Shown here in pieces: positions 22,216 to 63,590 of a stretch of 64,000 nt of DNA (positions within the stretch are counted from its first letter, which is position 1; the number at the start of each line of letters is the position of its first letter). A model generated the notes under the pieces. That model was not told the origin of the DNA. It did no database searches and saw only the letters and a program-made list of their open reading frames with translations. The stretch is from Octopus sinensis (Eukaryota). Location: the NCBI RefSeq assembly GCF_006345805.1, contig NC_043024.1, forward strand, positions 8,866,001 to 8,930,000, read 5' to 3'. The position numbers and the translations under genes are program-made.

Positions 22216-22231
22216 CTTTCCCTTTATATAT

Positions 22232-42877: not shown

Positions 42878-42955
42878 TCAGTCTAAGACGTTCTTGAAAT
42901 GATCCGAAACACCAGATTCCTTCACTTCCATAAACAGGTTGTATCGCTGCTCACT
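42878..42955 (-). CDS. TERT: Telomerase reverse transcriptase, terminal exon
   Basis: tatcag|AGT; SEQRYNLFMEVKESGVSDHFKNVLD*; matches the TERT C-terminus (human ...PSDFKTILD*). Confidence 0.85.
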   Translation of the reverse strand, partial: SEQRYNLFMEVKESGVSDHFKNVLD

Positions 42956-43035
42956 CTGATATTTGATAAAAATATTTTAAAAACAAAAATAAATGAAAAT
43001 AATTATTTGAATCATTTACATATACACCACACATA

Positions 43036-43268
43036 TACCTATTTCTTTATTATCCACAAGGGGCTAAACACAGAAGGGACAAACAAGGACAAACAAATGG
43101 ATTAAGTCAATTACATCGACCCCAGTGCATAACTGGTACTTATTTTATCGACCCCGAAAGGATGAAAGGCAAAGTCGACCTCGGTGGAATTTGAACTCAC
43201 AACATAATGGCAGATGAAATACCGCTAAGCATTTCGTCCGGCGTGCTAACGTTTCTGCCAGCTCGCCG
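43036..43268 (-). mobile_element. SINE family B monomer
   Basis: Sequence match. Confidence 0.85.
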
Positions 43269-43916
43269 TACATATACCACACACACACTTGTGTACCTGT
43301 GGAAAATCCTTGAGGTATATCTCTTACTCTCTCTTTATTTGTTTCAGTCATTTGACTGCGGCTATGCTGGAGCATCGCCTTTAGTGAGCAAATCGACCCT
43401 AGGGCTTATTCTTTGTAAGCCCAGTACTTATTCTATCGGCCTCTTTTGCCAAACTGTTAATTTACGGGGACGTAAACACACCAGCATCAGTTGGGGGAAC
43501 AAACACAGACACACACATATACATATATACGATGGGCTTCTTTCAGTTTCCGTCTACCAAATCCACTCACAAGGTTTTGGTTGGCCCTTTAAGGCAGTGC
43601 TCCAGCATGGCTGTAGTCAAATGACTGAGACAAGTAAAAGAGGGTAGTGAAAAAGTTGGGATCCATTATCTTAATGCATAACCCAGTTTACCTCCCTCAG
43701 CTGACCCTTGGCAACCAGACAAAATAAAAATCAGTTAATAAAGTTCAAAGCTCTAAACATATTCACTAAAAATGTGTCCTTCTTCACTTAACCCCTTCAA
43801 GGTATACACGCTTGATTGTGGACTTTCATGTTTGTGAAATAAATACCTACAAGTTTTAAGTTAAGTTCAATTCCAGATCAGAACGAGGTTGATTCCATTT
43901 TCCATATCTCATCAAC

Positions 43917-44079
43917 AGGCGCAGGAGTGGCTGTGTGGTAAGTAGCTTGCTTACCAACCACATGGTTCCGGGTTCAGTCCCACTGCATGGCACCTTGGGC
44001 AAGTGTCTTCTACTATAGCCCCGGGCCGACCAATGCCTTGTGAGTGGGTTTGGTAGACGGAAACTGAAAGAAGCCTGTC

Positions 44080-44111
<32 letters not shown>

Positions 44112-44305
44112 TTGTCCCCCCAGCATTGCTTGACAACCGATGCTGGTATGTTTATGTCCCCGTAACTTAGCAGTTCGGCAAAAGTGACCGATAGAATAAG
44201 TACTAGGCTTACAAAGAATAAGTCCTGGGGTTAATTTGCTTGACTAAAGGCGGTGCTCCAGCATGGCCATAGTCAAATGACTGAAACAAGTAAAAGAGTA
44301 AAAGG
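43917..44305 (+). mobile_element. SINE family A
   Basis: Full-length copy. Confidence 0.85.
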
Positions 44306-44514
44306 GAATGAAATAAATACCAACAGTGTATTGCTGGGTTGGTTATATATACAGGGTATGCTAGTTATTTATGAAAGCTTTTAAGAACCATATGTGTCCC
44401 AAACTTTAATTAAATAATCTCTCCTTTTTCAGCCCCAATATAGAAGCTTCTATGCAGATGATGAAAATGCATGCCATTCTTGTCATAAAGTGACAACCAT
44501 AATGGTGGAGGCAC

Positions 44515-44812
44515 ATGGCCTAGTGGTTAGAGCAGTGGACTCGCAGTCGAGGGATAGCGGATTCGAATCTCAGACCGGGCGATGTGTGTGTTTATGAGTG
44601 AAACACCTAAGCTCCATGTGGCTCCGGCAAAAGGTAATGGCGAAACTTCTGCTGATTCTTTCGCCACAACTTTCTCTCACTCTTTCCTCCTGCATCTTGC
44701 AACTCACCTGCGACGGACCAGCGTCCCGTCCAGATGGGGAACCTATACGCCAAGGAAACTGGCCCTTATGAGCCAGGAATGGCTCAAGAAGGAACAAACT
44801 AAACTAAACTAA
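44515..44812 (+). mobile_element. tRNA-derived SINE family C (variant tail)
   Basis: Head GGAGGCACATGGCCTAGTGGTTAGAGCAG...GGATTCGAATCTC. Confidence 0.75.
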
Positions 44813-44909
44813 ACCATAATGACTCACAGGTTATAACCTTAAATATTGCTTGGTCATTTCATATTTAAGAACAGAAAAGATTTCCTAACACCTAATAGGA
44901 ATGTGTCTT

Positions 44910-45380
44910 CTGATTGAAGAAGCACTTGTTGAACAATCTCAAGCACCCTGCGGTGCCTGACATGCTCTGGTTCTTTTCAAATGAGAAGAACTTTCTTCAA
45001 GATCAAAAAATGAAAAGGTGGACTGACAGATGGTTCTGTGCTGGTTTCACTGAAGACTCATTGTTATGAACACCAAATTCCCATTGTCTGTGAAGGTCTT
45101 GGGAGTCCTAAGTAACGCTCCTCACTTTGTCCTGCAAGGTTTTAGGGGTCAATGCAGCAGCCTACATCAAGCCCTGAATAAAGAGAGATGCTTGGGGGAA
45201 GCCGTACACGTTCCAGCAAGACTCTGCTCCCTTTTACATGGCCAGTAAGATCCAGGAGTGAATGGCTGAAAATTTTCATGATTATGTTACCCCTAACATT
45301 TAACCTCCTAGCTCTCCTGATTTAAATCCCCTGAATTACTATGTCTAAGCCTCATTGAGAGGGATCAAGCAAGCATACCT
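44910..45380 (+). pseudogene. Tc1/mariner-superfamily transposase relic (catalytic region)
   Basis: Reads LWFFSNEKNF, NTKFPLSVKVLGV, YTFQQDSAP and PPSSPDLNPL with stops and frameshifts. Confidence 0.85.
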
Positions 45381-45388
45381 ACAATACA

Positions 45389-45698
45389 GGCGTTGTGAGT
45401 GTTTATTGAGTGAAAACACCTAAAGCTCCATGACGCTCCGGCAGGGGATTGTGGTGATCCCTGCTGTACTCTTTCGCCACAACTTTCTCTCACTCTTACT
45501 TCCTGTTTCTGTTGTACCTGTATTTCAAAGGGCCGGCCTTGTCACTCTCTGTGTCAGGCTGAATATCCCCAAGAACGATGTTAAGGGTACACGTGTCTGT
45601 GGAGTGCTCAGCCACTTACACGTTAATTTCACGAGCAGGCTGTTCCATTGATTCGGATCAACCGGAACCCTCATCATTGTAACCGACGGAGTGCTTCC
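45389..45698 (+). mobile_element. SINE family C, 5'-truncated
   Basis: Inverted relative to the copies at 48996 and 52538. Confidence 0.85.
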
Positions 45699-45830
45699 CC
45701 CCCCCCCCTGAGGCAGTAATTAAGGTTGATGGCAGTTTTTTTTTTACATACCAAATTCTGTGTTATTGTGTCATTTCATTGTTTTTAACATAGTAAAGTT
45801 TGATTCCCGATACTAAAATGTTGGAATTAC

Positions 45831-45936
45831 CAGGAGGAGTTTTGTCCGAGTAAAGTACATCTGCAGCATCTTACGAAGTTTGTGATATTGACTGCAATGG
45901 CAGGACAGTTTAATATCGAACGCCATGAAGCACAAC
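45831..45936 (-). CDS. TERT: TERT exon (C-terminal extension)
   Basis: atatag|G; (W)LCFMAFDIKLSCHCSQYHKLRKMLQMYFTRTKLLL; donor CTG|gtaatt; aligns with human WLCHQAFLLKL. Confidence 0.85.
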
Positions 45937-46027
45937 CTATATCAGGATAGAAAAATAAAAATAAAAGAGATTGTAACACATTTAGTGTCTACAGAGTTAC
46001 GTCTATGCTTCTCTCTCTCTCTCTCTC

Positions 46028-46520
46028 TCATCGTTTAGCGTCCGCTTTCCATGCTGGCATGGGTTGGACGGTTCAACTGGGGCCTGGGAAGTCAGGAGGC
46101 TGCACCAGGCTCCAGTCTGATCTGGCAATGTTTCTACAGCTGGATGCCCTTCCTAATGCAAACCACTCCGTGAGTGTAGCGGGTGCTTTTACGTGCCACC
46201 GGCACAGGTGCCAGACGAGGCTGGCAAATGGCCACGATCGGAGAGTGCTTTTTACGTGCCACCGGCACAAGGGCCAGGCAAGGATGGCAAACAGCCATGA
46301 TCAGATGGTGCTTTTTACGTGCCACTGGCACGGGGGCAAGGCGAGGCTGGCAAACGGCCACGATCGGATAGTGCTTTTTACGTGCCACTGGCATGGAGGC
46401 CAGGCGAGGCTGGCAACGGCCACGATCGGGAAGTGGTTTTTTTACATGCCACCGGCACGATGCCAGTCGGGCGGCGCTGGCAACGGCCACGTTCGAATGG
46501 CTTTCTTACGTACCACCAGC
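46028..46520 (-). mobile_element. Family D element with ~60-bp minisatellite
   Basis: Sequence match. Confidence 0.75.
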
Positions 46521-46529
46521 AATTTCCAT

Positions 46530-46748
46530 TAGTGTTCAGATTACTCTATTAAATATAATACTTTTTCACTCAAATTGTTTTGAATTAATCATGCATTATC
46601 TTATAGCTTTGAGGTTTCAGTGATGTGATTGTTTATTTTTAGCATGACATTGTAGGTTAGGTGTGAGAGGCTAGATATCGCCAGTGTGAATATAAAACAT
46701 TTAGAATATTTGGGCCAGATATGGCCGGTTTAAACACCAAAGGATTAA
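46530..46748. mobile_element. Degenerate piggyBac-type MITE (P1)
   Basis: Interior matches 39770-39979; termini eroded. Confidence 0.65.
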
Positions 46749-46989
46749 ATAAAGATGCTTGATGGATTTATTTTTATTGCACTCTTTATCAAGAATCATC
46801 ATAAGTTAAGTTAATTTTTTGGCTCAAAAAGCAAAAAGCAAGGCCATGTAGGGGGACATGGAGTTATGTACAGGGAGGGTGTTCATGCAAAGAGTTCAGG
46901 CCATTTCTGGTCAAGAGAGACTTTGAACCGAGTGGTCGTCTGCATCTTCACTATCTCATATTTAATATCCTATCATTACTAGGAATTTT

Positions 46990-47570
46990 ATTAGTATTCG
47001 GATACTGGATATAGTAAATTTTGCCCTTGTACCCAGCTTCAGATAATGCACAGTTACAGTAATTTTCATTTTGTACAAATACACCCACATTGACAGGAAG
47101 CTTTGAAATATGAGTTGATATATTTTTAATGATAGAATTTATGATGTTTCTAGGATGATTAGAATGTTTATTCACATATCTTAAACACGCATTTGGTTTA
47201 TGATATGGTTGGCATTGTCCGATACTTAAGTGCTGGGTAACATCAATGAAGTTAACCTTCCGAAATTCATTTTCTATGGAAATGGACAGACGGAGGTACT
47301 TAAAGAATTTAAAAAGTTTTTTTCCAGGAATTTTTAACATTAACCTTACTAGACCTATGGATAGTGAAAAGAACATCATCCCTATATAATCCATCTCTTA
47401 CTTCAGGAAATTCTCTATGTACACAGTTAACATAAACGTCCCCTAAATCAGTTACTGGTGCAGGTTTGCTGGACCCCAAAATAATGTTGAAATTAGTGGA
47501 TCTGTCAGTCCTAGTACAGTACTTTCCATTGAATTTTGTTATGGAATGTACTAGACTAGGGCTGATAGAC
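46990..47570 (-). pseudogene. Penelope-like retroelement reverse transcriptase relic (motif C to thumb)
   Basis: GLYRDD, KVNFIDVT, PYHKPN, YVNKHSNHP and ALSEAGY motifs; one frameshift near 47310-47390. Confidence 0.8.
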
Positions 47571-47698
47571 TTGATAATTTTGACATTACTGTGGGGTCCA
47601 GTAACTCTGCACAAGTAACTGATACAATGAGAAAGAGTAAATTTGCACATATGCATGTGTGTGTTGGGCAGGTGTATGCTAATAAAATTTCTACATAC

Positions 47699-47745
47699 CA
47701 TTTATTCTCCACTTTGTTCAGTGGGTAACTGTTTGCGCCATTCAT
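47699..47745 (-). CDS. TERT: TERT exon (47 nt)
   Basis: ttacag|ATG; MNGANSYPLNKVENK(TG); donor gtatgt; exactly bridges the phase 0 and phase 2 neighbours and supplies the conserved Trp. Confidence 0.78.
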
Positions 47746-48285
47746 CTGTAAAATGATAACAACAGTATTAATAACAACCAACAGTAGCCCTCCTTGGAAA
47801 TTTGTGCCCCTGTGCACAAACTGTAAACCATTATCATCATCATCATTAGTTTTAGAATGGTAGAATCAACAGAGCGACAAACAAAATGCCAAGATGTACT
47901 TAGTTATATTCTTCACTTTCCGAGTTCTAATATTGTTAAGGTCATCTTTTGCTTTCGTGTTTCTGGGATTGGGGAAGGGGATGTGTATGTCTTAAAACAA
48001 GTACCAGTCATATACTGGCTGCGAGTAAATCAGTTACATCTCTCTTTAAGTCATAAATCTACTTGATCAAAACTGACCTGGGGTTAAAAAAACAACAGCA
48101 ACAACCAAAGCATTTGGCAATCTGATTGTGATACCATTGTTAATTAGAGTAGTAAGTTCTTGTTTCCGCAATCCCTTGGCTCCTATTTTTTTTTTCATTG
48201 AGAAATAAAAGTCAAGGTGGAAAAGGCAGCACAATGATCCTTTATTTTCTGAGGACCTCCAAGATTTGAAGAAAGTATGGAGTTA

Positions 48286-48696
48286 CTCTCTTTTTACTCT
48301 CTCTTTTACTTGTTTCAGTCATTTGACTGCGGCCATGCTGGAGCACTGCCTTTAGTCGAGCAAATTGACCCCGGGACTTATTCTTTTTGTAAGCCCAGTA
48401 CTTATTCTATCGGTCTCTTTTGCCGAACCGCTAAGTGACGTAAACACACCAGCATCGGTTGTCAAGCAATACTAGGGGACAAACACAGACACACAAACAT
48501 ATACACACACACTTATATATATATACATATATACGACAGGCTTCTTTCAGTTTCCGTCTACCAAATCCACTCACAAGGCATTGGTCGGCCCGGGGCTATA
48601 GCAGAAGACACTTGCCCAAGATGCCACACAGTGGGACTGAACCCGGAACCATGTGGTTGGTTAGCAAGCTACTTACCACACAGCCACTCCTGCGCT
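48286..48696 (-). mobile_element. SINE family A
   Basis: Full-length reverse copy. Confidence 0.85.
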
Positions 48697-48995
48697 TAGT
48701 TATCCGCAAACTGAAGACATTGGCAAAAATACTTGCAACAGAGGCAGCTGGGGACCATCAAAACTCAACAATTTAGAAGACAAAGTGCTTGAACAAACAC
48801 CACAAGGCATCATGTCTAACGCTACAACAATTACACCAATTTGCTGTCTTGGATGACTATTTTATTTATCCCCCAAAATGACAAAGCTTATCATGGTGGG
48901 ATTTGAACTCAAAACACAAAGACCTCAAACAAAGCTTTTTATTCTTCTCTCTAATGATTCTGCTAATTGGCTGATTTAAAATAATTTGCCAACTT

Positions 48996-49782: not shown

Positions 49783-50549
49783 AGCGGCAAGCTGGTAGAA
49801 ACGTTAGCACGCCGGGCGAAATGCGTAGCCGTATTTCGTCTGTCGTTACGTTTCGAGTTCAAATTCCGCCGAGGTCGACTTTGCCTTTCATCCTTTCGGG
49901 GTCGATAAATTAAGTGCCAGTTACGCACTGGGGTCAATGTAATCGACTTAATCTCTTTGTCTGTCCTTGTTTATCCCCTCCATATTTAGCCCCTTGTGGG
50001 TAGTAAAGAAATAGGTATTTCGTCTGTCGTTACGTTCTGAGTTCAAATTCCGCCGAGGTCGACTTTGCCTTTCATCCTTTCAGGGTCGATAAATTAAGTA
50101 CCAGTTACGCACTAGGGTTGATGTAATCGACTTAATTTGTTTGTCCCCTCTGTGTTTAACCCCTTGTGGGTAGTAAAGAAATAGGTATTTCATCTGCCGT
50201 TAGGTTCTGAGTTCAAATTCCGCCGAGGTCGACTTTGCCTTTCATCCTTTCGGGGTCGATAAATTAAGTACCAGTTACGCACTGGCGTCGATGTAATCGA
50301 CTTAATCCCTTTGTCTGTCCTTGTTTGCCCCCTCTATATTTAGCCCCTTGTGGGTAGTAAAGAAATAGGTATTTCGTCTGTCGTTACGTTCTGAGTTCAA
50401 ATTCCACCGAGGTCGACTTTGCCTTTCATCCTTTCGGGGTCGATAAATTAAGTACCAGTTACACACTGGGGTCGATGTAATCGACTTAATCCCTTTGTCT
50501 GTCCTTGTTTGTCCCCTCTGTGTTTAGCCCCTTGTGGTAGTAAAGAAAT
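49783..50549 (+). mobile_element. SINE family B tandem array (one head, four body units)
   Basis: AAAGAAATAG|GTATTTC junctions at ~50014, 50184 and 50368. Confidence 0.88.
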
Positions 50550-50703
50550 ACATGTTTGAAATCAGCATTAAATAATGGTTCCAAATCACCCCATAAGTAG
50601 ACAAATCCCCATTTATTTCATATAAAAATGCAGACTCATGTAACCATTAGCACAACCCTCACCATTCATCAATTTCCTTATATTAATGTCTGCAAATACT
50701 GAC

Positions 50704-50762
50704 CTTTTTCATGTAGAAATGAGTTTGTTGATTGAAATAGTCAGCAATTTCTTCAATACATT
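50704..50762 (-). CDS. TERT: TERT exon
   Basis: tttcag|AA; (E)CIEEIADYFNQQTHFYMKK; donor AAG|gtcagt. Confidence 0.82.
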
Positions 50763-50833
50763 CTGAAAATATATTTATATAACACAATAAAATAAGCATT
50801 ACATACATACATACATAAATGTGTGTGTGTGTC

Positions 50834-50986
50834 TCTTTTACTCTTTTACTTGTTTCAGTCATTTTGACTGCAGCCATGCTGGAGCACCGCCTTTAGTCAA
50901 GCAAATCGACCCCGGGGCTTATTCTTTGTAAGCCCAGTACTTATTCTATCGGTCTATTTTGCCGAACTGCATCGGTTGTCAAGCAA

Positions 50987-51036
<50 letters not shown>

Positions 51037-51332
51037 GACAGGCTTCTTTCAGTTTCCGTCTACCAAATCCACTCACAAGGCATTGGTCGGCTCGGGGCTA
51101 TAGCAGAAGACACTTGCCCAAGGTGCCACGCAGTGGGACTGAACCCGGAACCATGTGGTCAGTAAGCAAGCTACTTACCACACAGCCACTCCTGCTCTTA
51201 CTCTCTTTTACTGTGCCTATATATATATATTCTTTTACTTGTTTCAAGCATTTGACTGCGGCCATGCTGGAGCACCACCTTTAGTCGAACAAATCAACCC
51301 GGGACTTATTTTTGTAAGCCTAGTACTTATTC
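50834..51332 (-). mobile_element. SINE family A copies (one with an internal deletion, one partial)
   Basis: Sequence match. Confidence 0.75.
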
Positions 51333-52336: not shown

Positions 52337-52466
52337 CGAAGAAGAAATTTTGATTTGCTGCCACACGTTTGGTAGAGGGGAGTCTGCATACGTGAGTATG
52401 GAATCGGCAAGCAATCAGGTAGAAGAAATTAAAGACATTGTCTATAATTGTTCCAAGAGTATTGAT
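52337..52466 (-). CDS. TERT: TERT exon (C-terminal extension)
   Basis: ctctag|ATC; INTLGTIIDNVFNFFYLIACRFHTHVCRLPSTKRVAANQNFFF; donor G|gtaagc; aligns with human VNSLQTV...AYRFHACV..LP...NPTFF. Confidence 0.9.
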
Positions 52467-52991: not shown

Positions 52992-53034
52992 CTCACTGTC
53001 CACAAATATAAGCTGACATTTTGGTTTCAAGAAC
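52992..53034 (-). CDS. TERT: TERT exon (43 nt)
   Basis: ttttag|G; (R)FLKPKCQLIFVDSE; donor GAG|gtaagg; aligns with human LRLKCHSLFLDLQ. Confidence 0.88.
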
Positions 53035-53144
53035 CTAAAATGAAAAGAACAGATGTCCTTGAATGAAACAAATCTCTTAACACCTTTCAGATACACAAAT
53101 GTTCATGCAGAAACGCACACAGATACACATTCATAAACATTTAA

Positions 53145-53420
53145 AATATACACACACACACACACACTCACACACCCACTCACACACACACAAACACTCA
53201 CTCACACACACCTTCACACCCACTCACACACACACCTTCACACCCACACAAACACTCACTCACACACACCTTCACACCCACACATTCATACACACACACC
53301 TTCACACCCACTCACATTCGTACACACACACACACACAAACACACCACTCACTCACACACACCTTCACACATTCGTACACACAAACACACCCACTCACAC
53401 ACACACACAAACACACACAC
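53145..53420. repeat. Degenerate (CA)n/CACT microsatellite
   Basis: Directly visible. Confidence 0.9.
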
Positions 53421-53452
53421 AGAGTCCATTATCCCTCTAGTATATTGTTTAA

Positions 53453-53673
53453 CCCTTTAGTGTTCACATTATTCTGCCAAAATTAATCCTTTTTTATCCA
53501 CGTTGCCTTGAACTAATCAGGCATTATCTTGTAGCTATGAGATTTTGATGAGGTAGCTGTTAATTTTTAAAACGATATTGTAGGGTTGGTGTGAGAGACC
53601 AGATCTGGCCAGTTTGAACATAAAACAGGCAGAATACTTTTGGCCGGATGTGACCAGTTTAAATGCTAAAGGG
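53453..53673. mobile_element. piggyBac-type MITE (P1), inverted relative to 59039-59259
   Basis: TTAA|CCCTTTAG...CTAAAGGG|TTAA. Confidence 0.88.
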
Positions 53674-54194
53674 TTAAAGTAAAGTGGGTAAGTCTGGGAA
53701 ACTGAACCTCCTCATTGGATCTATTTTCAACTAGGAGCATTTGCTATTTTACTTGATGTTTGTAGAGGGACATTTGAAGGCTCTCAGAGATTAGTGAGAT
53801 TGATATCATTATTGTTACGTCTGAGTTATTGGAAGTCGATAAATTAAGTACCAGTTACACACTGGAGTCGATGTAATCGACTTAATCCATTTGTCTGTCC
53901 TTGTTTGTCCCTTCTGTGTTTAGCCCCTTGTGGGCAGTAAAGAAATAAGAAATGGTAGGATATTGGTCAACATATCTACCATGGTTTCCCATACCAGTGT
54001 AAACTCTGCTGCTTCATTGTCTCCAGTAGCAACCCCAATATACCATAGACATGTAAATTTTTCCATCTTTGTTCTCCCTTTCTTAATATGGAAGTGAGAA
54101 ATTTAATTGCTTCCCTCTCTTAGTTCACGCATCACCATCAATAACACAAACATCACCACCCTCATCAGCTCAATTCCTTTTCAATTTGCAAATC

Positions 54195-55089
54195 AGCCAG
54201 CACTGCCTTGACTGGCTCCTGTGCCGGTGGCACGTAAAAAGCACCAACCGATCATGGCCGATGCCAGACTTCCTTGACACCTATGAAGGTGGTACGTAAA
54301 AAGCACCAACCGATCGTGGCCGATGCCAGACTCCCCTGACACCTGTGCAGGTGGCACATAAAAAGCACCAACCGATCTTGGCCAATGCCAGACTCCCCTG
54401 ACACCTGTGCAGGTGGGACATAAAAAGCACCAACCAATCGTGGACGATGCCAGACTCCCCTGACACCTGTGCAGGTGGCACGTAAAAAGCACCAACCGAT
54501 CCTGGCCGATGCCAGACTCCCCTGACACCTTTGCAGGTGGCACATAAAAAGCACCAACCGATCGTGGACGATGCCAGACTCCCCTGACACCTGTGCAGGT
54601 GGCACATAAAAAGCACCAACCAATCGTGGACGATGCCAGACTCCCCTGACACCTGTGCAGGTGGCACATAAAAAGCACCAACCGATCATGGCCGATGCCA
54701 GACTCCCCTGACACCTGTGCAGGTGGCACATAAAAAGCACCAACTGATCTTGGCCGATGCCAGACTCCCCTGACACCCGTGCAGGTGGCACATAAAAAGC
54801 ACCAACCAATCTTGGCCAATGCCAGACTCCCCTGACACCTGTGCAGGTGGCACATAAAAAGCACCAACCGATCTTGGCCGATGCCAGACTCCCCTGACAC
54901 ATGTGCAGGTGGCACATAAAAAGCACCCACTACACTCTCGGAGTGGTTGGCGTTAGGAAGGGCATCTAGCTGTAGAAACACTGCTAGATCAGACTGGGCC
55001 TGGTGCAGCATTCTGGCTTCCCAGACCCCGGTCGAACCGTCCAACCCATGCTAGCATGGAAAGTGGACGTTAAACGATGATGATGATGA
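54195..55089 (+). mobile_element. Family D element with ~12 tandem 60-bp units
   Basis: Unit TGGCACATAAAAAGCACCAACCGATC..GCCAGACTCCCCTGACACCTGTGCAGG; (GAT)n tail. Confidence 0.8.
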
Positions 55090-55116
55090 ACTGGATCAGG
55101 GCTGATCAAGAGTTAA

Positions 55117-56195
55117 CCCTTTCGTTACTATATTTCTGACCAAAATACACCCCTTATGTGTTTCAATTAATTTCTAACGTAATCATAAATTTAGTCTGGT
55201 TTCATTAAACAACTATAACTTTTTTATTTATCAATATATTAATCTGATTTTTGGAAGATAATTTAATGAAATATTCTCAACCAATTCTATACTATAATTT
55301 TTGTCACAAAGTGACTCTAATTGCAGGTAGATACAGGTAAATTCAACAAAATATAAAATTAAAATTTTGTTCAAACATCGCTATAGAAAATGGGTTATTA
55401 GCTAATATTCAATTGGGTATACAACAAAATTTTACGATAGAATTTGTTATTCTGGGTAACTTTCTGATACCCATAATAATATTTACGGCAAAATAGTCTT
55501 AATTTCATTTAAGGTTATGGGAAACCACAAACTATCGTTTCTTTCGCTTTGTTTACGTTTAGCGTAATGGTTCGTTTTCGCCGTAATGATTTCAAATAGG
55601 CTCATTCGAAAAAAAAGAAATAGTCTAAGGCTTTACTCCTCTGGGAACGTCTGTGGCTTGGTCCAGTTTCTTCAGAAAAATCACCGAAAGAAACAGTTTT
55701 TAAATTTTCACTCCATTCAGGTGCCAATTCGTTTTCTTTATCGCTGTCGGAGCTCTCGAATTCACTGTTTTCACTTTCGGAAAATGAAACATCAGATTCA
55801 TTATCAAATACCATGTGCTTTTTTTTTTCAGTCATAGAGTTAGATTTATGAAAGTCTTCAGTAGAAAATCCTTCGAATTCTGACTCGCTGCTTGATATAA
55901 TGAAATTCGTATCCATTTTTTGTCAGAATTACAAATTTTGAAAACACAATAGGAACAAATTTCGGAAAAAAATCTCTCAAAATTCACGGAATTAAAATTA
56001 CACTTCGATAATTGTACAAAACTGTAGTTGAACTGTTTACGAAGTATAATACGTATTTTCACGAATGTACTAAAGAGATTTGCTCTGATATTCTCATTTA
56101 AATATGAATAGGTAAATTCAGGCGGCTTTGGGCGGTTTGGTCACATTAACCAAAATTTTTTTCGGGCGGCTTTGGGCGGTTTGGTAACGAAAGGG
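55117..56195 (-). mobile_element. Internally deleted piggyBac element retaining the transposase N-terminus
   Basis: TTAA|CCCTTTCGTTAC...GTAACGAAAGGG|TTAA; ORF 55602-55916 has an acidic N-terminus then W...F....GP...LDYFF as in piggyBac transposases; subterminal direct repeat GGCGGCTTTGGGCGGTTTGGT. Confidence 0.85.
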
Positions 56196-56340
56196 TTAAT
56201 CAACAATATTTGAAGCTACAGACTGTGGGGTGCCAAGCTGTAGCAGCTGTATAATGTCTGACAAATTGCAGGGTTCTTGTCACCTAACTACTCCACTCAT
56301 ACACCATATCATTTACTCAGAAACTGAAAGACTGGTTTAC

Positions 56341-56410
56341 CTGAGTAAGCATTCTTGTAAACTGACTCCAGGATGATGTGAAAGGTCAGTGGAAACAGTG
56401 TCCGAAATAG
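56341..56410 (-). CDS. TERT: TERT exon
   Basis: ttacag|CT; (S)ISDTVSTDLSHHPGVSLQECLL(R); donor AG|gtaaac; phases fit both neighbours. Confidence 0.83.
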
Positions 56411-56556
56411 CTGTAAATAAATAAACAAATAAAGAAATAATAATATTAATGTCATTACCAGCATCGCCTTACTGGCACTTGTGCCAGTGGCACGTGAAAA
56501 CAAAAACATTCGATAGAAATCCAAGTGACCAAAACAGTTAAAAGAATATATATATT

Positions 56557-56950
56557 CGCAGGAGTGGCTGTGTGGTAAGTAGCTTGCTTACGAACCACAT
56601 GGCTCCGGGTTCAGTCCCACTACGTGGCACCTTGGGCAAGTGTCTTCTACTATAGCCCCGGGCCGACCAATGCCTTGTGAGTGGATTTGGTAGACGGAAA
56701 CTGAAAGAAGCCCGTTGTATATATGTGTGTGTGTGTGTGTTTGTGTGTCTGTGTTTGTCCTCCTAGCATTGCTTGACAACCGATGCTGGTGTGTTTACGT
56801 CGCCGTCACTTAGCGGTTCGGCAAAAGCAACCCATAGAATAAGTACTAGGCTTACAAAAGAATAAGTCCCAGGGTCGATTTTCTCGACTAAAGACGGTGC
56901 TCCAGCATGGCGGCTGTCAAATGACTGAAACAAGTAAAAGAGTAAAAGAG
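56557..56950 (+). mobile_element. SINE family A
   Basis: Full-length copy. Confidence 0.85.
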
Positions 56951-56954
56951 AGTG

Positions 56955-57085: not shown

Positions 57086-57143
57086 ACTCACACAAGCCCA
57101 ATCGATGGCAGCTCTGCTTTGTGGTAGACTTCCAAATTGGAAA

Positions 57144-57520: not shown

Positions 57521-57662
57521 AGAGAGAACCTTGCCCTAATAAGGGTGCAGTTGGACTAGAGACTTTTCAAGGTTGTCGACAATCCCTAACTCGACCTGGA
57601 AGTCTCCCCCCAAAAATATCGCTTAATTACAATCAGGCTAACGAGAAGCATGTTATACTCAC

Positions 57663-57743
57663 AGATTCCACAGTATCTGGAATAATCCTTCGTAATCTCA
57701 AGAGATGTCATATTAATCAGCAAACCACAATATGGCATCATAT
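57663..57743 (-). CDS. TERT: TERT exon (RT motif E, primer grip)
   Basis: tttcag|AT; (D)MMPYCGLLINMTSLEITKDYSRYCGI; donor T|gtgagt; aligns with human [22 protein letters not shown]. Confidence 0.92.
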
Positions 57744-57774
57744 CTGAAAGAATGAATAGAATAAAGAGTGATGA

Positions 57775-58260
57775 GTGAGTGAGTGAGTGAGTGAGTGAGG
57801 AGTGAGTAAGTGAGTGAGGAGTGTGTTAGAGAGTGAGGAGTGAGTGAGGAGTGAGTGAGTGAGGAGTGAGTGAGGAGTGAGTGAAGAGTGAGTGAAGAGT
57901 GAGTGAGGAGTGAGAGAGTGAGTGAGTGAGTGAGGAGTGAGTGAGTGAGTGAGGAGTGAGTGAGAGAGGAGTGAGTGAGGAGTGAGAGAGTGAGGAGTGA
58001 GTGAGTGAGAGAGTGAGTGAGAGAGAGTGAGTGAGAGAGAGTGAGTGAGAGAGGAGTGAGTGAGAGAGTGAGTGAGTGAGAGAGGAGTGAGTGAGAGAGT
58101 GAGTGAGTGAATGAGAGTGAGAGAGTGAGTGAATGAGAGTGAGAGAGTGAGTGAGTGAGTGAGGTGAGAGTGAGTGAGTGAGGAGTGAGTGAGTGAGTGA
58201 GGAGTGAGTGAGTGAGGAGTGAGTGAGTGAGTGAGTGAGTGAGTGAGTGAGTGAGTGAGT
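57775..58260. repeat. (GAGT)n/GAGTGAG microsatellite
   Basis: Directly visible. Confidence 0.95.
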
Positions 58261-58574
58261 GGTCGTCGTCTTCTTATTCCAATCAGGAAGTCACGCCATC
58301 AGCCACAAAGAATAATCTCTAATTCGAGCCTACTCTAAGCTACTAAGAGTGCGTGCGGCAACTTGAAGATCCCCACCACCACACGCGATAGACTGGCGGT
58401 TGCACGGGAGCGAAAGCTACGTTGATATCCTCATTCCGTAAACGGTAGCTTTTAACAGGTGGAGAGCTGAACCATCCTGGGGTACAGAGGATTCGCAATC
58501 TAGACTAGGGTCTGAAAGTTTGCCACACCATAGTGGGTTACACCACGGTTCCTCTGCTTTGTGGCAGGAGTAGG

Positions 58575-58763
58575 AAGAAAGAGTGAGAGAAAGTTGTGGT
58601 GAAAGAGTACAGCGGGGTTCACCACCACCACCCTGCTGGAGCCTTATGGAGCTGAGGTGTTTTTTTGCTCAATAAACACTCACAATGCCCGGTCTGGGAA
58701 TCAAAACCGTGTTCTTACGACCGTAAGTCCGCTGCCCTAACCACTGGGCCATTGCGCCTCCAC
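58575..58763 (-). mobile_element. SINE family C, 5' half
   Basis: Head GTGGAGGCGCAATGGCCCAGTGGTTAGGGCAGCGG on the - strand. Confidence 0.8.
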
Positions 58764-59038
58764 TTGTTTTTGTTGTTGGGTGGTGGCGGTGGCAGTGATA
58801 ATGGCAGTGTTGGTGGTGGTGGTGGTGGTGGTAGTGATGGTGCTGACAGCAGTAGTGGTACAATGATAGCAGAAGCGGGTGAGATATTGAATGAAAGAGA
58901 TATTGCTGCTAAGATGCTGAACTGGTAAGTCATTAAAACATTAAACATTTATCCCAGTGTCCATTTGATGGCATGCACAACTCTCTCACTCAATAATAAT
59001 AATAATAATAATGATGATAATAATAATTTAATTTTTAA

Positions 59039-59259
59039 CCCTTTAGCATTTAAACCGGCCATATCCGGCCAAAAGTATTCTGCCTGTTTTATGTTCAAAC
59101 TGGCCAGATCTGGTCTCTCACACCAGCCCTACAATATCGTTTTAAAAATTAACAGCTACCTCATCAAAATCTCATAGCACCAAGATAATGCCTGATTAGT
59201 TCAAAACAATTTGGATAAAAAAGGATTAATTTTGGCAGAATAATGCAAACACTAAAGGG
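59039..59259. mobile_element. piggyBac-type MITE (P1)
   Basis: TTAA|CCCTTTAG...CTAAAGGG|TTAA. Confidence 0.88.
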
Positions 59260-59406
59260 TTAAATACATATTTTATCTGAGAATTTGCACATGTAATCTG
59301 GGAATGCATACAATGAGCTTCTCTGCCCTAGGTGTATGGAAAACACTTGGCGAGAAACGGAAGAAAATTTGAAGGAAGGAAAAAACATAATAATAATAAT
59401 AATTAC

Positions 59407-59508
59407 CTGTCTGTTCAAGATTCGGTATCCAACCATGGTGCAGATGATTATAGTAGAAATTGATGGAGAGTTTGTCCCGCTGAATGTAACAGTTATACTG
59501 GCAGATAC
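59407..59508 (-). CDS. TERT: TERT exon (RT motif D)
   Basis: tttcag|GT; (G)ICQYNCYIQRDKLSINFYYNHLHHGWIPNLEQT; donor G|gtaatt; aligns with human GVPEYGCVVNLRKTVVNF. Confidence 0.88.
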
Positions 59509-59839
59509 CTGAAATAAAACTGCTTTTATTATTTTCAAATTTAATTTTTCTGTGTTGAATGGGTTGGACAAAATTACTCCAGGAAGGAGACCCATCACCA
59601 GATCCCTTTCTTGAAACCAACCCTTTTTTTAAAATTATTTTTTCAAGTAATGTACTTCATTCCATGTCTTTTCACACCTAATCACCAAGTTGCCGGACTT
59701 TTTCTTCATGTGCAGCATAACATCCCATCTAGCAGCAACGAAAATACACACACACACACCTTCCTTCCAGGTACTGAAACAGTCGCCTAGCCATCCGGTC
59801 ACTCTCCCTATCAAGTCCATAATTTTAGGCTTCTATAAT

Positions 59840-60428
59840 GTTGTCCTGTGCCAGTGGCACGTTAAAAGCACGGTCTGAACGTGGCCGATGCCAGTGCCGC
59901 CTTGACTGGATTCTGTGCCGGTGGCACGTAAAAAGCAACATCCAAACATGGTCGATGCCAGCGCCGCCTTGACTGGATTCTGTGCCGGTGGCACGTAAAA
60001 AGCAACATCCAAACATGGCCGATGCCAGTGCCGCCTTGACTGGCTTCTGTGCCGGTGGCACATAAAAAGCACCATCCGAACGTGGCCGATGCCAGTGCCG
60101 CCTTGACTGGCTTCCGTGCTGGTGGCACGTAAAAAGCACCATCCGAACGTGGCCGATGCCAGTGCCACCTTGACTGGCTTCTGTGCTGGTGGCACGTAAA
60201 AAGCACCAATCCGATCATGGCCATGGCCAGCCTTGCCTGGCACCTGTGCCGGAGGCACGTAAAAAGCACCCACTACACTCATGGAGTGGTTGGTGTTAGG
60301 AAGGGCATCCAGCTGTAGAAACACTGCCAGATCAGACTGGGCCTGGTGCAGCCTCCTGGCTTCCCAGACCCCAGTTGAACCGTCCAACCCATGCTAGCAT
60401 GGAAAGCGGATGCTAAACGATGATGATA
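59840..60428 (+). mobile_element. Family D element with ~7 minisatellite units
   Basis: Sequence match; unit variant differs from the 54195 copy. Confidence 0.8.
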
Positions 60429-60677
60429 ATGATTATTATTATTATTGTTATTGAGTGAGAGAGCAGTTCATGCCATCAAAGTGACACTGGGGTAAAATAT
60501 ACAAAGCCAAGTATACCCATCATGACTACCGGTCTGATAAGGGTACACCAGACATATGCATCACAACCATATGTGCGCGACATGGTGATCTCATATCAAG
60601 ATAAATAGCACATGACATTGCAGGTGGGGCCCAGTTAGAATTTTCTTCTGGTCGAGTAACCCATCCCACTCAAAAGG

Positions 60678-61028
60678 CAACGCTGGGTCATAGTGCTAGT
60701 GCATGTAAAGAGAGCTGCGTGTGTGCGCACATACACACGAATACTGTCCAAATCTCCGACCAATCACATACAGCTAGCTGGCATTCAATTGGCGTATCAA
60801 GTTTCGGGCATTTTGATTGGGTCTTGGATAGAAAGTTCAGAAAAAGGTCACTTCTATTGATTTTTTAATGGCTTTGCGGGGTGACTGGGGAAATGTAAAG
60901 ATGTGCACGACCACCCTTGGACGGTTTTGAATGACCATAGAAAGTGCGAGCCCTCTAACTGAAAAATTGTGGATTTGTATAAAGGACACACACACAGACA
61001 GACATTTTGCCGTTTATATATAGAGAGA
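60678..61028 (-). mobile_element. Non-autonomous Helitron (H2), 3' end rearranged
   Basis: Reverse match to 51896-52261. Confidence 0.75.
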
Positions 61029-61147
61029 TTACTCCTTCTATGCAACTATCAAAACACATACGTACTACATTACACAATCTATCTTGTCATCACATGTCTA
61101 CAAATTGAAGAATAAAAAACAAAGAAATACAAAGAAAAGGCAATCAC

Positions 61148-61355
61148 CAGTGAGGAATGTCTCAAGGAAGTTCACTGCTCTTGTCTTGTCTGGTGTGACA
61201 AATAAGTAGTCATCTACCAACCGCATCATCAGTTCATCGCCTTTCACTTCTAACAGGCTTCTCTCCATGTGTCCATAATAGAAACTGCACAGCAGTATTG
61301 ACAGAATGGAACCTTGGCTGATACCTACTTTCTGCAAGTAATATCTGGAATTGAT
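61148..61355 (-). CDS. TERT: TERT exon (RT motifs B' and C, catalytic DD)
   Basis: caacag|ATC; INSRYYLQKVGISQGSILSILLCSFYYGHME...MMRLVDDYLFVTP...FLETFLT(G); donor G|gtgatt; diagnostic TERT QGS.LS.LLC..YG and RLVDD.L.VT motifs. Confidence 0.95.
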
Positions 61356-61589
61356 CTGTTGGAAAGAAAAACAATAGAAAACACAGCCCTTCCAGCATCA
61401 TAAGGGTAGCAAAAACTGAAGGAATAAATTAAAACAATAATCTTTTTAAAATATTACACATAAGATACAGTTATTTGGCCCATTAAAATACTATTTGCTT
61501 TGCTTTAGGAACATACTATGCTCCCACCACCCGCATGCATGGATGCACTCTCCCTCTCTCTCTCTCTCATATGCTGAATACTGGATCAG

Positions 61590-62390
61590 GTTATGATGGT
61601 CAAAGGGAGAGTCACAGCAGAATATATCAATGGCAAAGTAGACCTAAATAAGATACAGTTTGGCTTCATACCCAGAAGAGATACCAGTAATGCAATCTTC
61701 CTAGGAAGGCAACTTCAGGGGAAATACTTAGCTAAGAGTAAACCATTATTCCTAGCATTTGTTGACTTAGAGAAGAAGTTTTGACGGGTGCCACATACAG
61801 TAAACTGATGGTCATTAATAACAATATTAATGATGATGATGAAATTATTGTATACAGTGCTCAGGTGCACCACAACTTGTCAGAAAGTGCGTATAAAGTA
61901 TATGCAGTAATGTACAAATGCCTGGGAAGTGAACAGTGTATGAGTCAGATACATGCTTGCGTGTGTATGGAGGGGAGAAAATCAGGTGTAGTGTTGGCGA
62001 ATCTCAGGAAGCATGGAAGTTTTGAAGGATGCAGTGCTCCGACAACTAACAACTGATGCCAGCAGTTTGTTCCATACTTCAGCAACTCTTAGTGTGAAAA
62101 AATGTTTCCTAAAGTTTAAGGAAACTAGGTGTTGATAAACAGCAAGTGAAGGTTGTATAAGCCATTTACAAAGATGCAGTAAGTAAAATGAGAGTCAATG
62201 AGAACTTTGGTCTCTGCTAAGATGACTTCAAGTACTTTTGATTCCAGGTTTTGCTTGCACACCTGGAATTTTTTAAATTCTACTACAGATCCCACTATGA
62301 GAATATGGTCATCAGCATATATAGTAGTTTCCCAGGGCAGCCAATCTTAAATTAGAGCCCTAGGGGATATTAACAAATAGGAGAGGACTG
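61590..62390. pseudogene. RTE-type LINE RT relic, interrupted and partly inverted
   Basis: + strand QFGFIP...AIFLGRQLQ...AFVDLEK (61620-61790) and RKLGV...KDAVSKMRV (62110-62205); - strand SPLLF...YADD (62390-62206); a CR1-type 3' tail is inserted at ~61810-62100. Confidence 0.7.
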
Positions 62391-62802
62391 GGATCTTTTC
62401 AGTTTGAACGGCAGTTTTTATAGCGGTGTCATATGAAATTGTCACCCATATTATGACCCTAGTATCGATCTATTGCATTTCAATCTGTTTTAGGGTTAGG
62501 GGTGGGGGGGAAGGGTATCTGTTTTTCTTCACAAATGTAAATAAACCCAATCTGTTTCTTAAGCGAGGGAGATATTCATACGGCACAGAATGTTTTTTAC
62601 CTCAATAGACGTCACTGATTGGTTGAAATTGGAAAAATTGAAGAAAAAAAAAACAACAAATATCTTACAAACGATAGAATTTTCTCAATAAAGCCAAGAG
62701 AAAAAGATGTTTTATAAACACATTCTACCAGTATACGAAGTTTAAAATTTTTTAGTTACCTAGAAATTATGTTAAAAACTGCCGTTCAAACCAAAAAGAT
62801 CC
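62391..62802 (+). mobile_element. MITE, GGATCTTTTC-TIR family
   Basis: Both TIRs present. Confidence 0.85.
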
Positions 62803-62943
62803 TAACCTGGAACTAAACAACAGGAGAGATATGAATGCTCTTCTCAATACTGCTAAAGTGAGCAACAGGGCATTACAGCTCCAACTAAGGCAAATAACAT
62901 ACTCAACCTAGCCTTTACCAACAATACAAATTTCATTCACAAT

Positions 62944-63338
62944 CTTTTACTCTTTTACTTGTTTCAGTCATTTGACTGCGGCCATGCTGGAGCACCACCT
63001 TTAATCGAGCAACTCGACCCCGGTACTTATTCTTTTTGTAAGCCCAGTACTTATTCTATCGGTCTCTTTTGCCAAACCGCTAAGTAACGGGGACATAAAC
63101 ACACCAGCATCAGTTGTCAAGCAATGCTAGGGGGACAAACACAGACACACAAACATATATATATGTACATATACACAACGGGCTTCTTTCAGTTTTCGTC
63201 TACTAAATTCACTCACAAGGCTTTGGTCGGCCCGAGGCTATAGTAGAAGACACTTGCCCAAGGTGCCACGCAGTGGGACTGAACCCGGAACCATGTGGTT
63301 GGTAAGCAAGCTACTTACCACACATCCACTCCTGCGCC
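62944..63338 (-). mobile_element. SINE family A
   Basis: Full-length reverse copy. Confidence 0.85.
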
Positions 63339-63515
63339 AATGTTCAGGTTTAGACTTTGTATTCTCCATTGCACAATGTTCCTTTAATGAAAGTTTTTTT
63401 TTTTATAAGACACTTTTAGGTCCAGTTCAATACATGTGTATTTATATGTATAGCTTTTAAAATGCCCTGAAAATGAAATCAAGGTATGAAGAATTAACAA
63501 TAAAAATTAATTAAC

Positions 63516-63590
63516 CTTAACAATGTTTCTGGCGACATGATTGTAGAGTTGTGACAGTAGATCAGTTGCCTGCAAGTAATCATATTCAAC
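63516..63590 (-). CDS. TERT: TERT exon upstream of motif B'
   Basis: attcag|GTT; VEYDYLQATDLLSQLYNHVARNIVK; weak donor AAG|gttaat; phase 0 join gives ..NIVKINSRYYLQKVGISQG, like human ..HAVRIRGKSYVQCQGIPQG. Confidence 0.78.

What the first reader, a model, noticed from the sequence alone, without database searches (positions are those of the whole stretch)
42878..63590. Hand-reconstructed 3' half of an apparently intact cephalopod-type TERT
Seen: 11 small exons (75, 208, 102, 81, 70, 43, 130, 59, 47, 106, 78 nt; total 999) spread over 20.7 kb splice with GT-AG and matching phases into 332 aa without a stop. They cover motif B' (GISQGSILS), C (RLVDDYL), D, E (PYCG) and the CTE to FKNVLD*. Six of these exons do not appear in frame in the ORF track and could be missed by automated annotation. 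Whether this model is already described cannot be judged from the window.
Basis: partly seen in the sequence, partly recalled or inferred. Interest (0 to 1): 0.7.

Follow-up and report, generated by a model that had tools for sequence, protein, structure and literature searches.

The report
Last 11 exons of octopus telomerase gene
The minus strand of this stretch carries the last eleven small exons of an ordinary octopus telomerase reverse transcriptase (TERT) gene.

Summary
Confirmed and ordinary. On the minus strand, eleven GT-AG exons of 75, 208, 102, 81, 70, 43, 130, 59, 47, 106 and 78 nt join in phase. Their window coordinates are 63590-63516, 61355-61148, 59508-59407, 57743-57663, 56410-56341, 53034-52992, 52466-52337, 50762-50704, 47745-47699, 45936-45831 and 42955-42878. 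They give 332 aa plus a TGA stop.

The peptide aligns without a single gap, at 47% identity over 322 aa, to cuttlefish TERT, including a 1267-aa TERT from an intron-free 3.9-kb read-assembly contig. It passes Pfam TERT_C (76 bits against a cut-off of 27) and hits human TERT at 1.9e-45. It keeps motifs B', C (the DD pair), D (Lys) and E.

All exons and splice sites are conserved at the syntenic Octopus vulgaris locus. There dN/dS is 0.31, and exons are 98.2% identical against 95.4% for introns.

Three caveats apply:
- Size, phase and GT-AG alone are not unique. Two same-size decoy exons exist, and only homology picks the right ones.
- The window holds the last quarter of the protein, not half.
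- No octopus transcript was available.

Novelty is low.

The parts
63516..63590 (-). Exon 1 of the window part (75 nt, phase 0): VEYDYLQATDLLSQLYNHVARNIVK, the stretch just before motif B'
   Evidence: AG/GT-flanked. It is 75/75 identical in O. vulgaris and aligns to cuttlefish TERT residues 936-960.
61148..61355 (-). Exon 2 (208 nt): motif B' (QKVGISQGSILS) and motif C (LVDDYLF, the catalytic Asp pair)
   Evidence: tblastn with cuttlefish TERT gives 55% identity at E 3e-20. D73/D74 align with human D868/D869. It differs from O. vulgaris at 2 of 208 positions, both synonymous.
59407..59508 (-). Exon 3 (102 nt, phase 1 in and out): motif D (GICQYNCYIQRDKLSINF) and the D-E linker
   Evidence: tblastn hit to cuttlefish GIPLYNCSIQPEKTLINF.... 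The acceptor is tttcag and the donor CAG|gtaatt, both conserved in O. vulgaris. It is the most diverged exon, with 8 of 102 positions different.
57663..57743 (-). Exon 4 (81 nt): motif E / primer grip (MMPYCGLLINMTSLEITKDYSRYCG)
   Evidence: 81/81 identical in O. vulgaris. The O. vulgaris protein CAI9741689.1 starts here. It aligns to human FPWCGLLLD.
56341..56410 (-). Exon 5 (70 nt): start of the C-terminal extension (ISDTVSTDLSHHPGVSLQECLL)
   Evidence: Contained with the same junctions in O. vulgaris P0001. It differs at 1 of 70 positions, a synonymous change.
52992..53034 (-). Exon 6 (43 nt): FLKPKCQLIFVDSE
   Evidence: Matches P0001, human LRLKCHSLFLDLQ and cuttlefish INPKCLAIFVDKK. It is 43/43 identical in O. 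vulgaris. The same-size decoy at 55975-55933 has no ortholog there.
52337..52466 (-). Exon 7 (130 nt): INTLGTIIDNVFNFFYLIACRFHTHVCRLPSTKRVAANQNFFF, the core of Pfam TERT_C
   Evidence: tblastn to cuttlefish TERT at E 3e-6. Pfam TERT_C covers residues 172-296.
50704..50762 (-). Exon 8 (59 nt): ECIEEIADYFNQQTHFYMKK
   Evidence: 59/59 identical in O. vulgaris with identical flanks. It lies within the gapless alignment to cuttlefish TERT.
47699..47745 (-). Exon 9 (47 nt): MNGANSYPLNKVENK(W)
   Evidence: 65% identical to cuttlefish QINSVQSYPLSKCENKW. It is 47/47 identical in O. vulgaris.
45831..45936 (-). Exon 10 (106 nt): (W)LCFMAFDIKLSCHCSQYHKLRKMLQMYFTRTKLLL
   Evidence: 49% identical to cuttlefish LCFMAFFIKVSQYQSQY.... 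Splice sites are conserved in O. vulgaris.
42878..42955 (-). Exon 11, coding part (78 nt): SEQRYNLFMEVKESGVSDHFKNVLD plus the TGA stop (42880-42878)
   Evidence: The same C-terminus is found in O. vulgaris P0001. The model ends at the same distance from motif B' as cuttlefish TERT, 332 residues in both.
42768..42773 (-). Candidate poly(A) signal AATAAA, 105 nt after the stop (putative)
   Evidence: Pattern match only. It has not been tested.

Best explanation
The minus strand of 42878-63590 carries the last eleven coding exons of the single-copy cellular telomerase reverse transcriptase (TERT) gene of an Octopus species. That species shows about 4-5% neutral divergence from O. vulgaris.

These exons encode the back part of the reverse-transcriptase palm: motif B', motif C with the two catalytic aspartates, motif D with its lysine, and motif E (the primer grip). 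They also encode the whole thumb, the C-terminal extension (CTE). In known TERTs this part holds the active site and clamps the telomerase-RNA-template/telomeric-DNA duplex while repeats are copied onto chromosome ends.

The N-terminal three quarters of the protein (TEN, TRBD, motifs 1, 2, A and IFD) lie upstream, beyond window position 64000.

Shown here: the exon-intron structure, the homology, the conserved motifs, the synteny and the purifying selection. Inferred: that the gene is transcribed and spliced at these junctions, and that the protein is an active telomerase subunit.
For: - **Exon model.** Sizes, phases and GT-AG sites are reproduced.
- **Cuttlefish match.** The model aligns gaplessly at 47% identity over 322 aa to Acanthosepion pharaonis TERT (E 3e-98; named). 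It aligns equally to a 1267-aa cuttlefish TERT encoded as one uninterrupted ORF on a 3949-nt contig from run SRR8281664.
- **Domains.** Pfam TERT_C scores 76.1 bits against a cut-off of 27, and RVT_1 scores 29.8 against 29.6.
- **Structures.** Human TERT structures hit at 1.9e-45. D73/D74 fall on D868/D869 and YCG on WCG.
- **Homolog searches.** A full HMMER scan with exon 2 gave 991 hits at E <= 0.001. All 26 that I retrieved are TERT-like, and the two whose source names I looked up are called TERT.
- **Ortholog.** In O. vulgaris all 11 exons and all AG/GT sites are conserved and the frame stays open. The two coding sequences differ at 18 of 999 positions, with dN/dS 0.31 (Fisher p 0.016). 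Exons are 98.2% identical against 95.4% for aligned intron columns (p 9e-6).
- **Upstream part.** The upstream O. vulgaris gene model carries TEN_TERT and Telomerase_RBD. A further upstream exon matches cuttlefish residues 586-642.
- **Decoys score worse.** The model built with the two decoy exons gave TERT_C 57 bits and human TERT 2e-33.
Against: - No octopus transcript or protein spanning the junctions was found. The only octopus protein hit (P0001) is itself a computational model that starts at exon 4.
- The 5' three quarters of the gene are outside the window, so intactness of the whole gene cannot be judged here.
- Exon 3 differs from O. vulgaris at 7.8% of positions. That is not distinguishable from the intron rate (p 0.14) and is far above the other exons (p 2e-4). 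Constraint on that exon is therefore not demonstrated by the two-species comparison alone.
- The O. vulgaris annotation does not join exon 2 to exon 3 or to exon 4.
Confidence: 0.93

Rival explanations
1. The locus is a decaying or truncated TERT copy (a unitary pseudogene or partial duplicate) that merely still reads open in its last exons.
For: Only the C-terminal quarter is visible in the window. Exon 3 diverges at about the intron rate. The O. vulgaris annotation is fragmented here. No octopus transcript was found.
Against: All 11 exons are open and all 20 splice dinucleotides are kept in two species. dN/dS is 0.31 (p 0.016), and the exons other than exon 3 are four times less diverged than introns (p 2e-8). 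The catalytic DD, the motif D Lys and motif E are kept. The exon 3 changes fall on positions that also vary in cuttlefish, while the YNCxIQxxKxxINF core is unchanged. The upstream TEN and TRBD parts are present in the ortholog.
Confidence: 0.04
2. The exons are pieces of a retroelement reverse transcriptase (Penelope-like or LINE), stitched together by chance into a TERT-like peptide.
For: Penelope-like RTs are the closest relatives of TERT (PMC8557442). The window is rich in repeats and holds a LINE-type RT at 9797-10801. GT-AG open segments of the right sizes are common.
Against: The TERT_C domain lies well above its cut-off. The alignment to cuttlefish TERT is gapless over 322 aa. Every significant hit is a TERT. 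There are ten introns at conserved positions in a syntenic single-copy locus. The window's real LINE RT scores RVT_1 91 bits with no TERT_C.
Confidence: 0.01
3. The gene is TERT, but exon 3 (motif D) is a cassette exon that is often skipped. It is 102 nt, or 34 codons, in phase 1 on both sides. Joining exon 2 to exon 4 stays in frame (…FLT-D-MMPYCG…) and would give a catalytically dead isoform.
For: The exon has symmetric phase and a length divisible by three. Its divergence is about 7-fold higher than in the other exons. Its acceptor has the weakest polypyrimidine tract of the eleven, 0.53. The O. vulgaris pipeline breaks the gene around this exon. Lineage-variable alternative splicing of TERT is widespread in animals (PMC5405514).
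Against: The exon is present in the intron-free cuttlefish contig. The motif D core is perfectly kept in both octopuses. No transcript data of any kind support skipping. With only 8 differences, the rate excess is a small sample.
Confidence: 0.1

Closest known systems
TERT of the cuttlefish Acanthosepion (Sepia) pharaonis (CAE1228151.1 / CAE1228149.1), and a 1267-aa cuttlefish TERT from an intron-free contig of run SRR8281664
   Same: Gapless alignment at 47% identity and 66% positives over 322 aa. Both proteins have 332 residues from the start of the aligned stretch, just before motif B', to the C-terminus. They share cephalopod-specific strings such as SYPL(N/S)K(V/C)ENKWLCFMAF.
   Different: A different order of cephalopods, and 53% of the aligned residues differ. 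The last 10 residues do not align. Only the protein sequence of the cuttlefish gene is available here, so its intron positions cannot be compared.
Octopus vulgaris locus OX597840.1:8298005-8329115, with proteins CAI9741689.1 (202 aa, 'hypothetical', named TERT by UniRef) and an upstream 634-aa model
   Same: This is the syntenic ortholog. It has the same 11 exons and splice sites, 98.2% CDS identity, and the same downstream DUF1295 neighbour.
   Different: The public annotation splits the gene in two, with the second model starting at exon 4. The proteins differ at 9 positions, 5 of them in exon 3. Introns 5 and 10 are 2.0-2.3 kb shorter in O. vulgaris.
Human TERT (for example PDB 7qxa, 7trd, 7bg9)
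   Same: Motifs B', C, D, E and the CTE are collinear over residues 811-1103 at E 1.9e-45. The catalytic D868/D869 and the motif D lysine context are conserved.
   Different: The match is distant, with short gaps in the D-E linker and mid-CTE. Motif E reads YCG instead of WCG. Whether intron positions are shared was not tested.
Penelope-like element and LINE reverse transcriptases
   Same: The RT palm motifs B' and C are shared, giving a weak RVT_1 match.
   Different: Those elements lack the TERT_C thumb and are intron-poor and multi-copy. The window's own LINE RT (9797-10801) shows the contrast.

Membership tests
Telomerase reverse transcriptase (TERT) | RT palm motifs B', C (catalytic Asp-Asp), D (Lys) and E in canonical order | tested here: met
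   QKVGISQGSILS, LVDDYLF, IQRDKLSINF and PYCG are collinear with human and cuttlefish TERT. D73/D74 fall on human D868/D869. RVT_1 scores 29.8 bits against a cut-off of 29.6.
Telomerase reverse transcriptase (TERT) | TERT-specific C-terminal extension (thumb), Pfam PF21399 TERT_C | tested here: met
   76.1 bits against a cut-off of 27 (E 3.9e-21), covering profile positions 2-129 of 130. It also hits the CTE-only structure 5ugw at 6e-13.
Telomerase reverse transcriptase (TERT) | Closest relatives are TERTs, not retroelement RTs | tested here: met
   Every hit is a TERT. In the exon 2 scan, all 26 hits I retrieved are TERT-like, and both whose source names I looked up are called TERT.
Telomerase reverse transcriptase (TERT) | N-terminal TEN and RNA-binding (TRBD, motif T) domains, plus RT motifs 1, 2, A and IFD, on the same gene | not testable with these tools
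   These lie beyond window position 64000. No TERT exon is seen in 63591-64000. In the O. vulgaris ortholog the upstream model has PF11474 and PF12009, and an exon matching cuttlefish residues 586-642 lies about 750-900 nt past the point that corresponds to the window end.
Telomerase reverse transcriptase (TERT) | A cellular, intron-bearing, single-locus gene under purifying selection | tested here: met
   Ten GT-AG introns are conserved at the syntenic O. vulgaris locus. dN/dS is 0.31, and exons are 98.2% identical against 95.4% for introns. No second TERT-like hit is found in the window. Copy number in the whole genome was not testable.
Telomerase reverse transcriptase (TERT) | Transcribed, spliced as modelled, and active in telomere repeat addition with a telomerase RNA | not testable with these tools
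   No octopus transcript data are reachable. The only indirect support is the intron-free cuttlefish contig.
Penelope-like / LINE retroelement RT | A single or few-exon ORF, an endonuclease domain (GIY-YIG or APE), multiple copies, and no TERT_C | tested here: not met
   The model has eleven exons. Pfam finds only TERT_C and RVT_1. The locus is syntenic and unique within the window.

The most novel reading that the evidence does not exclude
No correctly joined octopus TERT model may be in the public protein sets. The only octopus hit is a 202-aa fragment, and O. vulgaris TERT is split around exon 3. Exon 3 (motif D plus the D-E linker) evolves about 7-fold faster than the rest of the coding sequence between two close Octopus species, and it can be skipped in frame. 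The most novel reading not excluded is that octopuses regulate telomerase through an exon-3-skipped, catalytically dead isoform, or are relaxing constraint on motif D. That would be of some interest for a short-lived animal that breeds once and dies.
Probability: 0.08. Interest if true: 0.35.

Novelty: already known. Interest (0 to 1): 0.1.

Why it matters
It matters little for biology. TERT is expected in any animal with TTAGGG-type telomeres, and cephalopod TERTs are already in the databases (cuttlefish full length, O. vulgaris in fragments).

The practical value is for annotation. Tiny exons of 43-130 nt are spread through repeat-filled introns, and the model shows how they join. It also shows where the O. 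vulgaris gene model breaks, and it gives a template for a full-length octopus TERT model.

The case is also a caution for hand reconstruction. Two decoy exons with the same size, phase, splice sites and open frame exist in the same introns, and only comparison with a cuttlefish TERT separates them from the real ones.

Tried and rejected
1. A brute-force search for all exon chains with the given sizes timed out. The per-size listing showed why: there are 6-43 open AG..GT candidates per internal exon size.
2. My first assembly used 59622-59521 as the 102-nt exon and 55975-55933 as the 43-nt exon. Both are rejected. The first has a poor acceptor (aaaaaaag), is thrown out of frame by a 1-nt indel in O. 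vulgaris, and aligns poorly to motif D. The second has no ortholog in O. vulgaris and disagrees with P0001. I spent some effort on alternative frames and donors around 59622-59521 before the tblastn with cuttlefish TERT showed the true exon 114 nt downstream.
4. The genomic locus of the cuttlefish TERT could not be retrieved, so its intron positions were not compared.
6. Literature searches found no paper on octopus or cephalopod TERT. The metazoan TERT survey PMC5405514 covers only oyster, Aplysia and Biomphalaria among molluscs.
7. The word-indexed protein search is lossy, since it missed cuttlefish TERT. The absence of other octopus TERT models there is therefore only weak evidence that none exist.
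8. I tried comparing intron positions with human TERT from memory of the human exon sizes. I dropped this because it cannot be verified with these tools.


Full report
**Observation.** The gene lies on the minus strand. Position 63590 is the first base of a 75-nt exon (cag|GTTGAA…GTTAAG|gttaat) that encodes VEYDYLQATDLLSQLYNHVARNIVK. Position 42878 is the last base of the TGA stop after …SDHFKNVLD.

| Exon | Window coordinates | Size (nt) |
|---|---|---|
| 1 | 63590-63516 | 75 |
| 2 | 61355-61148 | 208 |
| 3 | 59508-59407 | 102 |
| 4 | 57743-57663 | 81 |
| 5 | 56410-56341 | 70 |
| 6 | 53034-52992 | 43 |
| 7 | 52466-52337 | 130 |
| 8 | 50762-50704 | 59 |
| 9 | 47745-47699 | 47 |
| 10 | 45936-45831 | 106 |
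| 11 | 42955-42878 | 78 |

All ten donors are GT, eight of them GTA or GTG. Acceptors follow polypyrimidine tracts with 53-88% C+T.

That fits a track of ORFs of at least 60 aa. The in-frame ORFs around exons 1, 4 and 10 are only 35, 51 and 40 aa, and exons 5, 7 and 11 have none.

**How much of this is chance.** Size, phase, GT-AG and an open frame are weak criteria in 20.7 kb of AT-rich, repeat-rich sequence. For each internal exon size there are 6 to 43 segments that satisfy them.

I fell into this trap myself. My first assembly used 59622-59521 for the 102-nt exon and 55975-55933 for the 43-nt exon. Both have the right size, phase, AG/GT sites and an open frame.

That model still hit TERT (TERT_C 57 bits, human TERT 2e-33). 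However, it disagreed with the O. vulgaris protein P0001 in the 43-nt exon. Its '102-nt exon' is thrown out of frame by a 1-nt indel in O. vulgaris.

A tblastn with cuttlefish TERT then placed motif D at 59508-59407 (GICQYNCYIQRDKLSINFYYNHLHHGWIPNLEQT against GIPLYNCSIQPEKTLINFAYDHKTYGKLPQILET). With the correct exons the scores rise to TERT_C 76.1 bits and human TERT 1.9e-45.

**What it is.**
- The peptide aligns without any gap at 47% identity (66% positives) over 322 residues to TERT of the cuttlefish Acanthosepion pharaonis (E 3e-98).
- It aligns equally to a 1267-aa cuttlefish TERT encoded as one uninterrupted ORF on a 3949-nt contig assembled from run SRR8281664. A 3.8-kb ORF on a 3.9-kb contig implies an intron-free template. 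I take it to be mRNA-derived, which is an inference.
- A gapless fit across all ten junctions is the strongest available support for the junctions.
- Pfam finds TERT_C (cut-off 27) and RVT_1 (29.8 against 29.6) and nothing else.
- Against solved structures, all 15 hits are TERTs. Human D868/D869 align with D73/D74 (LVDDYLF), human QGSILS with QGSILS, NLRKTVVNF with IQRDKLSINF, and FPWCG with MPYCG.
- A filter-free HMMER scan of 1.8 billion representatives with exon 2 alone returned 991 hits at E <= 0.001. All 26 that I retrieved are TERT-like, and the two whose source names I looked up are called TERT.

The model corresponds to residues 936-1267 of the 1267-aa cuttlefish protein. The window therefore holds the last quarter of the protein rather than half.

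**Comparative evidence.** The only near-identical database protein is a 202-aa 'hypothetical protein' of Octopus vulgaris (CAI9741689.1, named TERT by UniRef). It starts at MPYCG and uses the same junctions for exons 4-11.

Its locus (OX597840.1, fetched as L001) is collinear with the window. All 11 exons and every AG and GT are present there, and the frame is open.

| Comparison with O. vulgaris | Value |
|---|---|
| CDS differences | 18 of 999 positions |
| Changed codons | 8 synonymous, 9 non-synonymous |
| dS / dN | 0.041 / 0.013 |
| dN/dS | 0.31 (Fisher p 0.016) |
| Exon identity | 98.2% |
| Identity over 10,105 aligned intron columns | 95.4% (p 9e-6) |

The source of the window is thus an Octopus species about 4-5% diverged at neutral sites from O. 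vulgaris. Which species cannot be determined with these tools.

In O. vulgaris the annotation splits TERT into a 634-aa model (TEN_TERT plus Telomerase_RBD) that ends shortly after exon 2, and the 202-aa model that starts at exon 4.

**Surroundings.** No TERT exon lies between 63591 and 64000. In O. vulgaris the next upstream exon matches cuttlefish residues 586-642. It maps about 750-900 nt beyond the point that corresponds to window position 64000. An AATAAA lies 105 nt after the stop.

Downstream, tail to tail on the plus strand, is the last coding exon of a DUF1295 gene (31022-31357, 98 bits). The same neighbour is present in O. vulgaris.

**Mechanism.** By homology to solved TERTs (established knowledge; human structures 7qxa and 7trd), this part of the protein has four working pieces:
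- the two magnesium-binding aspartates of motif C;
- the motif D lysine, which acts as general acid;
- the motif E primer grip;
- the CTE thumb, which holds the template-DNA duplex.

All are conserved here in sequence. Expression, splicing and activity are inferred, not shown.

**Rivals.**
- *Decaying copy.* This is unlikely given the open frame and splice sites kept in two species, and the dN/dS value.
- *Retroelement RT.* This is excluded by the TERT_C match, the ten conserved introns and the synteny. The window's real LINE RT (9797-10801; RVT_1 91 bits, no TERT_C) is an internal contrast.
- *Exon 3 behaves differently.* This one oddity remains. Exon 3 carries 8 of the 18 differences: 7.8% of its positions, against 1.1% in the other exons (p 2e-4). 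That is not distinguishable from introns (p 0.14). It has the weakest polypyrimidine tract. At 102 nt in phase 1 on both sides, skipping it would stay in frame and delete motif D. The changes sit at positions that also vary in cuttlefish, and the motif D core is untouched. I therefore read this as a variable linker rather than decay. An alternatively spliced cassette exon is not excluded.

**Comparison with what is known, and verdict.** The metazoan TERT survey PMC5405514 includes only three molluscs and no cephalopod, and I found no paper on octopus TERT. However, cuttlefish TERT proteins and the O. vulgaris fragments are already in public databases.

This is a routine ortholog of a universally expected gene. 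Novelty: already known. Interest: 0.1.

Noticed in passing
window 59407-59508 (-): Exon 3 (motif D plus the D-E linker) holds 8 of the 18 CDS differences from O. vulgaris: 7.8% of positions against 1.1% in the other exons, and 4.6% in introns. It is 34 codons long in symmetric phase, so skipping it would stay in frame. The O. vulgaris gene model breaks exactly around it.
   Followed up: partly
window 59521-59622 (-) and 55933-55975 (-): These are two decoy 'exons' with the same size (102 and 43 nt), phase, AG/GT flanks and open frame as the real exons 3 and 6. The first is frame-broken by a 1-nt indel in O. vulgaris. The second lies in sequence absent from O. vulgaris.
   Followed up: yes
window 9797-10801 (+), with a neighbouring ORF at 9110-9583: A LINE-type reverse transcriptase ORF of 334 aa (RVT_1 91 bits, no TERT_C). 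It is a retrotransposon fragment unrelated to the TERT gene.
   Followed up: partly
window 31022-31357 (+): The last coding exon of a DUF1295 (steroid-reductase/ICMT-like membrane protein) gene, scoring 98 bits. It lies tail to tail with TERT, and the same neighbour is annotated in O. vulgaris.
   Followed up: partly
window 49831-50550, 54218-54927, 59846-60270, 46183-46521: Tandem arrays sit inside TERT introns: 184-nt units (about 3.7 copies, with many more copies in the O. vulgaris locus), 62-nt units (11.5 copies, 93% alike), 67-nt units (6.4 copies) and 63-nt units (about 5 copies). The 62-, 63- and 67-nt units look related to one another (…GTGGCAC(A/G)TAAAAAGCACC…).
   Followed up: no
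for example window 62945-63338, 56559-56952, 50832-51332, 48284-48698, 43917-44307, 40232-40595: A SINE-like element of about 400 nt is scattered in both orientations through the introns and flanks, with many copies in the O. vulgaris locus too. Its spurious ORFs (…SVYQIHSQGIGRPGAIVEDTCPRCHAVGLNPEP…) crowd the ORF list.
   Followed up: no
window 57766-58261 and 53150-53421: Long microsatellites lie next to exons. (GAGT)n of about 500 nt ends about 20 nt upstream of exon 4. (AC)n of about 270 nt lies about 115 nt upstream of exon 6.
   Followed up: no
introns 5 (53035-56340) and 10 (42956-45830): These introns are 3306 and 2875 nt in the window but 972 and 871 nt in O. vulgaris. The size differences point to recent repeat insertions or deletions between close species.
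   Followed up: partly
window 20900-22400 and 3570-4900: Kilobase-scale low-complexity TG/CA- and TC-rich tracts produce long spurious ORFs of up to 368 aa, made of C/V/Y/I or S/L/I repeats.
   Followed up: no
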